Positions 31,601 through 34,600 of a stretch of DNA of 64,000 nucleotides are shown one piece after another. Origin of the DNA: Podarcis erhardii. Taxonomy: Eukaryota. The DNA is taken from the NCBI GenBank assembly GCA_964252035.1, contig OZ176200.1; one strand, written 5' to 3'. Below the pieces are notes generated by a model. It did no database searches. It saw only the letters and a program-made list of their open reading frames with translations, and had not been told where the DNA came from. The position numbers and the translations under genes are program-made. Within the stretch, counting starts at the first letter, position 1. Each line of letters opens with the position of its first letter.

Positions 31601-34600
31601 GTGTGCAATTAGTTATCCTACAAATACATCAGCAAGAGCAAGGTTACTTTTGTACACGTACAAACTTCTTCTGCATTGAAGGCACAGTTGAACTATATGT
31701 TGCATCATGGATCAGTTGCACTTCAAATAGACACTGCCTAGCTGGACTATCTGGACTCCCTCTCACAGAAGGAGAGGGAATAAGATGAGGAAATGAGAGG
31801 CAATGAAGGGATAGTTAAATAGTTAGGATAACTTAAGGAGACGACTCAGCTGTGTTAGGTTAAAATACTAGAACTTATTTTAGTATCATGTAAAAAAATA
31901 CAACTACTTCTGGGTATTGCTTTTTATAGATAAATATGTTTACTGTTTTAACTGTGTTTTGTCCTGGCTGGATTATAAAGATCAGTATCTCTCATCCCAC
32001 ATATCCTGTGTGGATATACTCAGTTAAGTGTACAGGAGAAGAGTCCTACGGTCTCTTAACTCACTAGGGACTGACAGCAGGTAGGTATTGTGAAGACTAT
32101 TGATGGAAGGCTAGATTCAGGGCAGTAGCTGAGTGGCTGATCTACTTGACTTCCAGGAGCCAGGGTCTTGTAGGAAACCCCAGGAATGCCATCCATGTTA
32201 AGAGCTTAAGATCTGTCACACGTCACAATATATCTGACATGTTCAGTTTGCATTCTGAGTTAGAACTCAGAATGAAAGGTGGACATCAGTCGTGAGCAGA
32301 TCACTTGACATGCAATACCCAACACACTTGCAGCATGCAAATTATATAGGATTAATCTTACCAGGGCTTCTGATTTGATTGCTGGTCTGACCATGATATT
32401 GTGGTCAGGATGCAGCATGACAGGTTTGGAGACTATAGGTACAGCTGGGCGACGCAGGGCAGGAGGGCTTGGAGAAAATTGCTATGGAGGTGCAATTTAA
32501 GAATATTACAGAAAACACCTGTGTGTTTCACACATTCTGAATGTAATTCAGACACTTCATCAACTTCTATCAAGTCCCATGAAACTCATACGAAGGTAAC
32601 CCACACCACCCACAATACCAACCAATGCACTATAGGGGTGGGGTGGCGATGGGTGGAGAACTTTATAGTTTGAACAACAATTTAAGCACCAAGCAATACT
32701 AGACTCAGGGCCATTTGGATATTTCATTTAGAATGCTTGCTTTTCCACTGATAGCTAGGACCATAAAACTAGGCATTTCATAAATAAAACAATTCGTTTC
32801 TTCTGAGATCTGAAAGTCTTATGGTATTATGTTGGAAGGCTATCACATTTTCTTTATTTACTAAATATATATATATATGACATACCAATGGGCTGCCTGA
32901 TGCAGATGACATTTTGCTGAGGTGACTTGTATTTCGTGCAACCTAAATGACAACAGGTTTCATATGGGGTATGATGACTTATGGTTTTGACATACCACAC
33001 AACCAATAATCATTTGAAAAACAAATTGGTTTATGACAGAAAGAAGAATAACATGCAGGTGACAAAATATGTACTTCTTTTGAAGCAAGCGTGACAACCT
33101 TACGATATTTTGACCCTTCAAAGACCTGTCTTACTTTAAAACAGGATAAAAAATATATAATGAGAATTGTTAGATAACTTTCATTTTAAATATTCTTGGC
33201 CCTTTATGGGTTTCCTCAACCCATTTGTATTAATTAAAACAGCAATACTGTACAGTTACCTGAGATTAAACCCTGCTGAACTCAGTGTGGTTCAACTACA
33301 TATATGTGTATAGGATTGTGCCATATATTAAAGTGGTCAATGACTAATACATTCCTTCCTTCATTGAAACAAGCATGCAAATATTTGTGAACACAGACTA
33401 ATCCCTACAATACGATTTAAAGCACTCTTATCTTATTTATAAACACTGAAATCAACTTATGAAAGAGAAACAAGCTAAACTATTTAAAACATGAACACTA
33501 GCATTTCCACCTGGATGGAGAAGTGGTATTAAAATCTTCATGTACGAAAACCAGAAACCAGAGAAAGCCTTTTGAAACAACAAAGCATCACAAGCAGACA
33601 GAAAGAACATGCAATTTGGGAGGACCAAGGATGGTCTTTAGTAGAAATCTGCAAAGAAGGTGCACCATTAGAGATCTCCATTGTGGTTAACAGATAGTGG
33701 AGTGCATAGTGAGCTATCAGTAGCTCAACAACAAATTTAGTAAAAATGTAAAGGTAAAGGGACCCCTGACTGTTAAGTCCAGTCGTGGACAACTCTGGGG
33801 TTGCGGCGCTCATCTCGCTTTATTGGCTGAGGGAGCCGACGTACAGCTTCCGGGTCATGTGGCCAGCATGGCTAAGCCACTTCTGGCGAACCAGAGCAGC
33901 GCACAGAAACGCCATTGACCTTCTTGCTGGAGCGGTACCTATTTATCTACTTGCACTTTGACGGGTGGCACTGTGGTCTAAACCACTGAGCCTAGGGCTT
34001 GCCAATCAGAAGGTTGGTGGTTTGAATCTCCACGACGGGGGGGGGGGGGGAGCTCCCGTTGCTTGGTCCCAGCTCCTGCCAACCTAGCAAATTTAGTACT
34101 TGATCATTAATGTGCTACTCAGAAGCACATTCATGTTTGATTCTCAGCTGTTATGCACATTTGCTCAAGCAGCTCCCCTTTTTCTTACACAAATATGTAG
34201 CAGAAAAACACACACTCAGGTGACTAATATAAGCTGTACAAATGTCTCCATGAAGCACAATAGGATTTCCATAAATGTGCAAAAGACCACACTGGGGCGG
34301 GGGTGGGGGTGGGAGAGGACAAGCATGATAAGACCATGTTCTAAAATGGGCTTATCTTTTCTTTTGTGGGGGAGTGGGGATGCTGCAGTACAATATCATG
34401 CAGAGCAAAACTCACAGTGGAATATGTATATTTTCTGTTGACAAACTCAAACAGAAGCAGGAGGTGGTTGGGTTTGCCACAGATGCAAAACATATTCCAT
34501 ACTATGTCATACCTTTGGATTGGATAAATAGGTCTGCTCACTGGTCTGAGAACTAATTGGACTAAAGCTCCTTCCCTTGTAGCTTTTCATTTCCCAGTCA

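What the first reader, a model, noticed from the sequence alone, without database searches (positions are those of the whole stretch)
33732..34098. Sauria SINE with an inverted 5' half inside an 11-bp TSD: a twin-priming signature in a BovB/RTE-mobilised SINE
Seen in sequence: identical CAAATTTAGTA copies (33732-42, 34088-98) bracket about 345 bp. The 3' half and (TTTACC)n tail read on the minus strand. The tRNA-like 5' half reads on the plus strand. Its internal end (...CCAACCTAG-CA) meets the outer TSD, sharing CA, and its 5' end (CGGGTGG) is fused to the 3' half (...TTTGACG) through a CG overlap. About 12 nt of the recalled consensus between the halves is missing. Established: inversion, small deletion, junction microhomologies and TSD together are the twin-priming structure of mammalian L1 and L1-made retrocopies, and Sauria SINEs share their tail with BovB. 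Inference: the squamate BovB machinery can twin-prime, even on a very short RNA. I am not aware of this being reported but cannot check the literature. The flip also points the Pol III A/B boxes antisense to USH1C.
Basis: partly seen in the sequence, partly recalled or inferred. Interest (0 to 1): 0.72.

Follow-up and report, generated by a model that had tools for sequence, protein, structure and literature searches.

The report
Half-flipped lizard SINE in one duplication
A single short jumping-gene copy (Sauria SINE) in an intron of a lizard's USH1C gene has its front half flipped inside one 11-base target duplication, as expected if it was copied from both cut DNA ends at once ("twin priming"); that mechanism is well known for mammalian L1, but I found no report of it for the BovB machinery that moves this SINE.

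Summary
An exact 11-nt direct repeat (33732-42 and 34088-98, its only two occurrences in the window) brackets 345 bp. The tailed 3' part of a Sauria SINE lies on the minus strand (33743-33963). Its tRNA-like 5' part lies on the plus strand (33964-34087).

Colinear reference copies show that the halves are complementary pieces of one element. Only 11 nt (GTTCGAAAGCA) is missing between them. There is a 2-nt overlap (CA) at the target junction and a 2-4-nt overlap (CG or GACG) at the inversion junction.

Read in the orientation of the tailed half, the duplication starts with TA. That is the published Sauria SINE/BovB insertion signature.

Every sequence-level hallmark of twin priming that I could test is met, so a single twin-primed insertion is the best reading (about 0.65). 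It is not proven:
- No empty or orthologous site could be fetched.
- No other SINE copy lies in the window, so same-subfamily origin of the halves and genome-wide frequency are untested.
- An in-place inversion after insertion gives the same topology.

The papers I searched describe 5' inversion almost only for L1, and it is very rare in Alu. None link it to BovB/RTE. First readers of this scan flagged similar inverted BovB, L1 and 7SK events elsewhere in this genome; these are unchecked. This is a modest, n=1 extension of a known mechanism.

The parts
33732..33742 (.). Target-site duplication, copy next to the SINE tail (the 3' TSD in the element's orientation; reads TACTAAATTTG on the minus strand)
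   Evidence: Exact 11-nt direct repeat with only two occurrences in the window. Chance about 1e-4 for this geometry.
33743..33760 (-). SINE 3' end: (ACCTTT)-type microsatellite tail ending in T4 (minus strand CCTTTACCTTTACATTTT)
   Evidence: Read directly. It matches the (ACCTTT)n end reported for Sauria SINEs and the tail of the colinear copy in L004.
33743..33963 (-). Non-inverted 3' segment of the Sauria SINE: body plus the BovB-like 3' region and tail. On the minus strand it starts CGTCAAAGTGCAAG.
   Evidence: BLAST and MAFFT against the colinear SINE in L004. Close by eye to a P. muralis copy printed in PMC13295347 Fig S6.
33960..33963 (.). Inversion junction. CG (33962-33963) can belong to either segment. 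GACG (33960-33963) is shared if the 5' end is read as GACG(CG)GG with a CG slip.
   Evidence: Sequence compared with the canonical 5' ends GGGACGCGGGT and GGGACGCAGTGG.
33964..34087 (+). Inverted 5' segment: the tRNA-like head of the SINE from about consensus position 7 to ...CCAACCTAG. It contains a 14-G run at 34037-34050.
   Evidence: Alignment to L004. Close by eye to P. muralis copies.
33966..33976 (+). Pol III A box (TGGCACTGTGG; 1 mismatch to TRGCNNAGTGG)
   Evidence: Pattern scan.
34019..34029 (+). Pol III B box (GGTTTGAATCT; 2 mismatches to GGTTCGANNCC, one of them at a CpG)
   Evidence: Pattern scan.
34088..34098 (.). Target-site duplication, copy next to the inverted segment (the 5' TSD in the element's orientation). 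Its first two bases, CA (34088-34089), also continue the SINE sequence, giving a 2-nt microhomology at the proposed internal priming site.
   Evidence: Both references continue ...CCAACCTAG with CA.

Best explanation
This is one retrotransposition event of a Sauria SINE RNA by the BovB (RTE-clade) machinery, in which both cut ends of the target primed reverse transcription (twin priming). The steps below are inferred unless marked as shown.

1. The bottom-strand nick primed on the (ACCUUU)n-U4 tail. This produced the non-inverted cDNA that now reads on the minus strand (33963 down to 33743).
2. The second nick, 11 bp away, freed a 3' overhang ending ...TTTG. That overhang paired with CA in ...CCUAGCA of the same RNA, in a stretch predicted to be unpaired. 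It primed a second cDNA that ran to within 2-6 nt of the RNA's 5' end.
3. The two cDNA ends were joined through a 2-4-nt overlap (CG or GACG).
4. The roughly 11 nt of RNA between the two cDNAs was never copied. That is about the length of the overhang.

The copy was dead on arrival. Its Pol III promoter now points away from its body and tail, antisense to USH1C.

Shown: the anatomy, the complementarity of the two halves and the TSD signature. Inferred: that this was one event, and the order of the steps.
For: - One exact 11-nt TSD encloses both segments, and it is improbable by chance.
- The segments are complementary parts of one SINE, with only 11 nt missing against two independent colinear references.
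- The topology is the twin-priming one. The internal end of the inverted segment abuts the 5' TSD, and its 5' end meets the start of the tailed segment.
- The junction overlaps are 2 nt and 2-4 nt. In 5'-inverted L1, about 70% of copies have 2-5 bp at the 5' junction (PMC2912911).
- The gap falls within the range seen for L1. In 46% of inverted L1 copies the two cDNA ends lie within 20 bp of each other (PMC12016303).
- In the orientation of the tailed half, the TSD starts with TA and the tail is (ACCTTT)-like. This is the published Sauria SINE/BovB signature (PMC13295347). The colinear L004 copy also has a TSD that starts with TA.
- An 11-nt TSD meets the overhang length of 10 nt or more that has been proposed as necessary for 5' inversion (PMC4245944).
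- The CA priming site is predicted to be unpaired in a fold of the reconstituted RNA (weak evidence).
Against: - This is a single locus, and the structure rests on one assembly.
- No empty site or orthologous locus was available.
- An in-place inversion of the 5' segment after a normal insertion gives the same topology.
- Overlaps of 2 nt are only weakly non-random (1/16 each).
- The T-stretch about 10 nt upstream of the TSD is only TT within ATTAAT, not the TTT of the published signature.
- CpG observed/expected differs between the halves (0.76 against 0.26). My by-eye site count (7 of 19 against 7 of 11 CpGs decayed) looks too small to show a difference; I ran no test, and the count rests partly on a consensus I recalled.
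- Twin priming of SINE-length RNAs is very rare even for L1: 1 of about 5,550 and 1 of 5,936 Alu insertions.
- In cell assays 5' inversion was almost confined to human L1 in human cells.
Confidence: 0.65

Rival explanations
1. A normal colinear Sauria SINE inserted on the minus strand. Later, a DNA-level inversion flipped its 5' ~125 bp in place (two breaks with end joining, or a replication template switch), with small losses at both breakpoints.
For: An in-place inversion of exactly the 5' segment yields the same topology as twin priming (reasoned). Small deletions (6 and 11 nt) and 2-nt overlaps are also typical of end joining. The copy is not young: many CpG sites have decayed, so there was time for a later rearrangement.
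Against: One breakpoint would have to fall within a few bases of the SINE/TSD boundary while leaving all 11 nt of the TSD intact. That is roughly a 1-in-50 coincidence within the element. No inverted repeats flank the inverted segment that could have driven it. Inversions of about 125 bp are rare per locus.
Confidence: 0.12
2. Assembly or polishing artefact. The real locus holds a colinear SINE, or something else, and the flipped 124 bp is a mis-join among reads of a highly repeated family.
For: No read-level check was possible. The segment contains a 14-G homopolymer (34037-34050) where the references have GGGGTG. This may be a homopolymer length error, which would show the locus is not error-free.
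Against: An artefact would not be expected to produce a clean 11-nt gap, junction overlaps, and an inverted piece that ends exactly at an intact TSD. There are no N runs in the window. The flanks are unique in the window.
Confidence: 0.08
3. Ordinary one-primer retrotransposition of an RNA that was already rearranged, for example a read-through transcript of a head-to-head SINE pair or of an earlier inverted copy. A variant is twin priming on two different SINE RNA molecules.
For: The product would look alike. First readers of this scan reported chimeric and 'double-tailed' BovB/SINE insertions elsewhere in this genome (unchecked), so unusual templates may occur.
Against: The 5' truncation of such an RNA would have to fall, by coincidence, within 11 nt of the point where the tailed half starts. 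No second copy of the rearranged arrangement is present in the window. The inverted part ends exactly at an overlap with the TSD.
Confidence: 0.08
4. Two independent insertions: a 5'-truncated SINE on the minus strand, and next to it an unrelated 3'-truncated SINE fragment on the plus strand.
For: CpG observed/expected differs between the halves (0.76 against 0.26), which could hint at different ages.
Against: A tailless 3'-truncated fragment is not a product of target-primed reverse transcription. The two breakpoints are complementary to within 11 nt. One exact TSD encloses both pieces, and there is no second TSD. My by-eye count of decayed CpG sites is too small to show that the halves differ in age.
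Confidence: 0.03

Closest known systems
Twin priming / 5'-inverted insertions of mammalian L1 (Ostertag & Kazazian 2001; surveyed in PMC2912911 and PMC12016303)
   Same: One TSD of 10-20 bp. A tailed non-inverted 3' segment. An inverted 5' segment whose internal end abuts the 5' TSD. A small gap between the two cDNAs. Short microhomologies at the 5' and inversion junctions.
   Different: The presumed enzyme is an RTE-clade (BovB) protein that recognises a specific 3' tail, not L1 ORF2p on poly(A). The template is a ~340-nt Pol III SINE RNA. The target signature is TA-initial rather than TTTT/AA. The host is a squamate.
5'-inverted Alu insertions (L1-mobilised SINE)
   Same: A SINE-length RNA flipped in its 5' part inside one TSD. 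This shows that a very short template can be twin-primed.
   Different: They are extremely rare: 1 of about 5,550 human and chimpanzee Alu insertions, 1 of 5,936 germline insertions and 1 of 130 somatic insertions. They are L1-driven with A-tails. The frequency for Sauria SINEs is unknown.
The single Nimb-2_DR 5' inversion in chicken DT40 cells (PMC4245944)
   Same: A non-L1 LINE with a TSD of about 12 bp giving a 5' inversion. It supports the idea that overhang length, rather than L1 itself, is what matters.
   Different: It was an experimental de novo event of an autonomous LINE from a different clade. It was not a natural genomic copy of a SINE.
Canonical Sauria SINE insertion (for example the colinear copy in viral contig L004, and P. 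muralis copies in PMC13295347)
   Same: The same head, body, BovB-like 3' region and (ACCTTT)n tail. The TSD is 11-12 nt and starts with TA.
   Different: Canonical copies are colinear. Here the head is on the opposite strand and 11 nt between head and body is missing.

Membership tests
Sauria SINE (Squam1-type, BovB-mobilised) | tRNA-related 5' region with Pol III A and B boxes | tested here: met
   The A box has 1 mismatch and the B box has 2 mismatches. The region aligns to the head of a colinear Sauria SINE. ARAGORN and Rfam do not call a tRNA, as expected for a diverged SINE head.
Sauria SINE (Squam1-type, BovB-mobilised) | Family-specific tRNA-unrelated body (…CCAACCTAGCAGTTCGAAAGCA…GCAAGTAGATAAATAGG…) | tested here: met
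   Both sides of this core are present, minus 11 nt. Identity to L004 is 68% over 229 nt. Close by eye to the printed P. muralis copies.
Sauria SINE (Squam1-type, BovB-mobilised) | 3' region shared with Bov-B LINE, and an (ACCTTT)n end | tested here: met
   The tail reads CCTTTACCTTTACATTTT. The motif AGAGTTGTCCACGACT resembles the P. muralis BovB 3' end AGAGTCGGACACGACT printed (compared by eye). The (ACCTTT)n end is as published.
Sauria SINE (Squam1-type, BovB-mobilised) | Tn-TA insertion signature: the TSD begins with T of TA, about 10 nt after TTT | tested here: inconclusive
   In the tail's orientation the TSD begins with TA, so that part is met. Upstream there is only TT at -11/-12 within ATTAAT, not TTT.
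Twin-primed (5'-inverted) retrotransposon insertion | A single TSD encloses both the inverted and the non-inverted segment | tested here: met
Twin-primed (5'-inverted) retrotransposon insertion | The non-inverted segment carries the 3' tail next to the 3' TSD. The internal (3'-most) end of the inverted segment abuts the 5' TSD. | tested here: met
Twin-primed (5'-inverted) retrotransposon insertion | Both segments derive from one template, with a small gap or overlap at the breakpoint | tested here: met
   There is an 11-nt gap against two colinear references. Same-subfamily origin could not be tested because there are no same-genome copies.
Twin-primed (5'-inverted) retrotransposon insertion | Microhomology at the 5' junction and at the inversion junction | tested here: met
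   CA (2 nt) at the 5' junction and CG (2 nt) or GACG (4 nt) at the inversion junction. The statistical weight is low.
Twin-primed (5'-inverted) retrotransposon insertion | Shown to be one event: an empty allele or orthologue with a single copy of the target, with no colinear intermediate | not testable with these tools
The flank ORFs are not on record in other assemblies.
Twin-primed (5'-inverted) retrotransposon insertion | The structure is real in the organism (reads span both junctions) | not testable with these tools

The most novel reading that the evidence does not exclude
Twin priming is not peculiar to L1. The stringent, tail-recognising BovB/RTE enzyme of squamates also primes from the second nick, even on a ~340-nt Pol III SINE RNA, and does so recurrently in this genome. 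The uncopied gap (11 nt) matching the TSD length (11 nt) would then mark the footprint of the annealed 3' overhang. This would tie 5' inversion to overhang length, as Yamaguchi et al. proposed.
Probability: 0.45. Interest if true: 0.5.

Novelty: new member of a known kind. Interest (0 to 1): 0.35.

Why it matters
5' inversion has been treated as a property of L1, and largely of human cells. In cell assays other LINEs gave almost none (PMC4245944), and L1-mobilised SINEs show it in about 1 of 5,000 insertions.

A clean natural example made by an RTE-clade partner of a SINE would suggest that the second-strand 3' overhang can prime reverse transcription in a distant LINE clade. It would also support the idea that an overhang of 10 nt or more, rather than L1-specific factors, is what permits the inversion.

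On its own this is one dead SINE copy in an intron, with no evident effect on USH1C. Its value is as a seed for a genome-wide survey. Lacertid genomes carry very many Sauria SINE and BovB copies, and other readers of this scan flagged similar inverted BovB copies.

Tried and rejected
1. Other SINE copies in the window, to build a same-genome reference: none found with BLAST (word sizes 9 and 7) or nhmmer.
2. Rfam and ARAGORN on the tRNA-like head: nothing relevant.
4. Lizard DNA in public collections:
- The metagenome scan with a 19-mer of the SINE gave 3 loci that share only the 19-mer, so they are chance hits.
- The genome-contig scan gave 0 hits.
- The first viral-contig scan gave 0 hits. 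The second gave the one useful colinear copy, L004.
5. Independent assemblies through exact ORF products: the 91-aa ORF spanning the left junction and the 113-aa ORF in the right flank are not on record.
6. SINE-derived ORFs in the protein collection, as a route to lizard contigs: no candidates.
7. Ostertag & Kazazian 2001 (PMC311219) is not held. I took the features of twin priming from PMC2912911, PMC12016303 and PMC4245944 instead.
8. The supplement of PMC13295347 does not print a Sauria SINE consensus. Only incidental copies in BovB flanks were usable, and I compared them by eye.
9. Two independent insertions: rejected because of the complementary breakpoints and the single TSD.
10. A plus-strand original element: rejected, because it would need an inversion plus a swap of the halves, and the TSD would then start with C rather than TA.
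Full report
**The observation**

The window holds CAAATTTAGTA exactly twice, at 33732-33742 and 34088-34098. Shuffles expect 0.13 occurrences. I placed the same 356-nt geometry at 200,000 random positions in the window, allowing +-3 nt of slack at each end. 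A repeat of 11 nt or more appeared in about 1e-4 of trials. Neither copy can be extended by a base.

The 345 bp between the copies is 56% G+C, against 39% in the flanks. It is unique in the window: BLAST at two sensitivities and nhmmer find no second copy of either half.

**What the insert is**

A scan of public viral contigs for the canonical core motif returned one 198-kb contig (L004). It carries a complete, colinear Sauria SINE inside a 12-nt TSD, TAGTGATTGCGG. This is probably the published Sauria SINE of an orthopoxvirus (mentioned in PMC12207798).

Aligned to this copy:
- Window 33964-34087 on the plus strand covers the head, up to ...CCAACCTAG.
- Window 33743-33963 on the minus strand covers the rest, from CGTCAAAGTGCAAG to the tail.

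Podarcis muralis sequences printed in the supplement of PMC13295347 show the same colinear order (...CCAACCTAGCAGTTCGAAAGCAC...GTGCAAGTAGATAAATAGG...). They include a 3' part that by eye is very close to the window's.

The head has an A box with 1 mismatch and a B box with 2 mismatches. The tail, CCTTTACCTTTACATTTT, is of the published (ACCTTT)n type. The element is therefore a Sauria SINE, and its two parts lie on opposite strands.

**Breakpoints**

Against both references, the 5' part stops at ...CCAACCTAG. The next two reference bases, CA, are also the first two bases of the right-hand TSD copy. The 3' part starts immediately after ...GTTCGAAAGCA. Hence 11 nt is absent, or 13 nt if the CA is credited to the target.

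At the inversion junction (…CTTTGACG|GGTGGC…), CG can belong to either part. The canonical 5' end is GGGACGCGGGT... in P. muralis and GGGACGCAGTGG... in L004. There are two readings:
- The head lacks its first 6 nt, with a CG overlap.
- One CG of CGCG slipped out, so the head lacks only GG, with a GACG overlap.

**Topology**

Read along the minus strand (the orientation of the tailed part), the order is:
- 5' TSD
- antisense head, from about position 125 down to about position 7
- sense body, from about position 137 to the tail
- 3' TSD

This is the arrangement described for 5'-inverted L1 (PMC2912911; PMC12016303). The internally primed cDNA is attached to the upstream target end. The tail-primed cDNA is attached to the downstream end. 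The two meet at an inversion junction.

The quantitative features fall within the L1 ranges:
- About 70% of inverted L1 copies have 2-5 bp of microhomology at the 5' junction.
- In 46% the two cDNA ends lie within 20 bp of each other.
- Their TSDs are 10-20 bp.

**Which machinery**

In the tail's orientation the TSD begins with TA. Nakatsuka and Ohshima (PMC13295347) report that Sauria SINE TSDs begin with T of a TA dinucleotide, about 10 nt after TTT. They also report that the SINE ends in (ACCTTT)n and shares its 3' end with BovB.

The upstream T-run here is only TT (at -11/-12 within ATTAAT), so that part of the signature is weak. In the opposite orientation the TSD would start with C, and the arrangement would need an inversion plus a swap of the halves. 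First-strand priming on the tail of the minus-strand part by the BovB enzyme is therefore the coherent reading. That BovB mobilises this SINE is taken from the literature, not tested here.

**Mechanism proposed (inferred)**

1. A bottom-strand nick primed on the tail.
2. A second nick 11 bp away freed a 3' overhang ending ...TTTG.
3. That overhang paired with CA in ...CCUAGCA. In a ViennaRNA fold of the reconstituted RNA, the three bases after CCUAG have an unpaired probability of 0.98. This is weak evidence, being a prediction on a decayed copy.
4. The second cDNA ran to within 2-6 nt of the 5' end of the RNA.
5. The two cDNA 3' ends annealed through CG or GACG.

The uncopied 11 nt equals the TSD length. 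This would fit an overhang lying on the RNA and blocking the first cDNA, but it is one data point.

**Rivals**

- In-place inversion of the 5' segment after a normal insertion. This gives the same topology and cannot be excluded. It needs one breakpoint within a few bases of the SINE/TSD boundary with the TSD left intact. No inverted repeats flank the segment.
- Assembly artefact. The clean junction features argue against it. The 14-G run (34037-34050), where the references have GGGGTG, may be a homopolymer length error, in which case the locus is not error-free.
- Retrotransposition of an already rearranged RNA, or use of two RNA molecules. This needs a coincidental 5' end within 11 nt of the body's start.
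- Two separate insertions. This is very unlikely given the complementary breakpoints, the single TSD and a tailless fragment.

CpG observed/expected is 0.76 in the 3' part and 0.26 in the head. Counting sites by eye against the references, and partly from a consensus I recalled, 7 of 19 and 7 of 11 CpGs have decayed. I ran no test on these counts; they look too small to show that the halves differ in age. I record it as unexplained but weak.

**Context**

An ORF on the minus strand at 48250-48753 carries the end of a PDZ domain. Its best solved-structure matches are harmonin PDZ2 (2kbs, 1x5n). From my own knowledge, OTOG neighbours USH1C in amniotes.

USH1C therefore runs on the minus strand. 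Whether 33.7 kb lies in an intron rather than beyond the last exon was not checked. The rearranged copy has its promoter detached from its body and tail, so it could not have given rise to further copies.

**Novelty**

Searches of the open-access library returned no paper among those listed that links twin priming with BovB/Bov-B/RTE, beyond citing Ostertag and Kazazian in a reference list; the query terms also included Sauria SINE, lizard and squamate.
- PMC4245944 found 5' inversion only with human L1 in human cells, plus one Nimb-2_DR insert in DT40 cells. It proposed that the overhang must be long enough.
- Inverted Alu copies are 1 in about 5,550 and 1 in 5,936.

This library lacks most subscription journals, so I cannot assert that no prior report exists.

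First readers of this scan noted 5'-inverted BovB copies (s1-220687, s1-254953), a 'double-tailed' BovB (s1-220705), and inverted L1, 7SK and U2 chimeras on other pieces of the same genome. These are unchecked AI notes. I use them only as a reason to run the genome-wide screen.

**Verdict**

The twin-priming reading is the best supported (about 0.65) but rests on one assembled locus. It is a new example of a known mechanism in a different LINE clade. It is of moderate interest to specialists, mainly as a lead for a systematic survey.

**Not done**

I could not do a read-level check, an orthologous-site comparison, a subfamily assignment or a genome-wide count.

Noticed in passing
window 34037-34050: There is a run of 14 G inside the SINE head where both colinear references have GGGGTG. 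It is either a homopolymer expansion or a polishing error.
   Followed up: no
window 48250-48753 (minus strand): An ORF whose C-terminal ~35 residues are the end of a PDZ domain. Its best solved-structure matches are harmonin PDZ2 (2kbs, 1x5n). This places USH1C on the minus strand of the window.
   Followed up: partly
L004 9703-10051 (minus strand): A 198-kb IMG/VR viral contig carries a complete colinear Sauria SINE inside a 12-nt TSD (TAGTGATTGCGG, TA-initial). Five extra A's lie between the 5' TSD and the SINE start. It is probably the published reptile SINE in an orthopoxvirus genome.
   Followed up: partly
PMC13295347 Fig S6 text (PodMur_1.0 9:47102718-47106341 and 8:78797268-78800888), seen: Two P. 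muralis full-length BovB copies carry a Sauria-SINE-like head (tRNA-like part through ...AAATAGGGACCGCT) joined directly to the BovB 5' region inside one 14-nt TSD. This is a SINE-head/LINE chimera that the parts of the paper I read do not discuss.
   Followed up: no
window 34105-34135: A near-palindrome (15-nt arms, 87% complementary, 1-nt loop) lies 7 nt from the TSD copy that adjoins the inverted segment. Whether a hairpin-prone target end favours second-strand priming is pure speculation.
   Followed up: no
window 33743-34087: CpG observed/expected is 0.76 in the tailed 3' part but 0.26 in the flipped head. My by-eye count of decayed CpG sites looks too small to show a real difference, and the contrast is unexplained.
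   Followed up: partly
window 1-64000: Only this one Sauria SINE copy is detectable in 64 kb, although the family is reported as very abundant in lacertids.
   Followed up: partly
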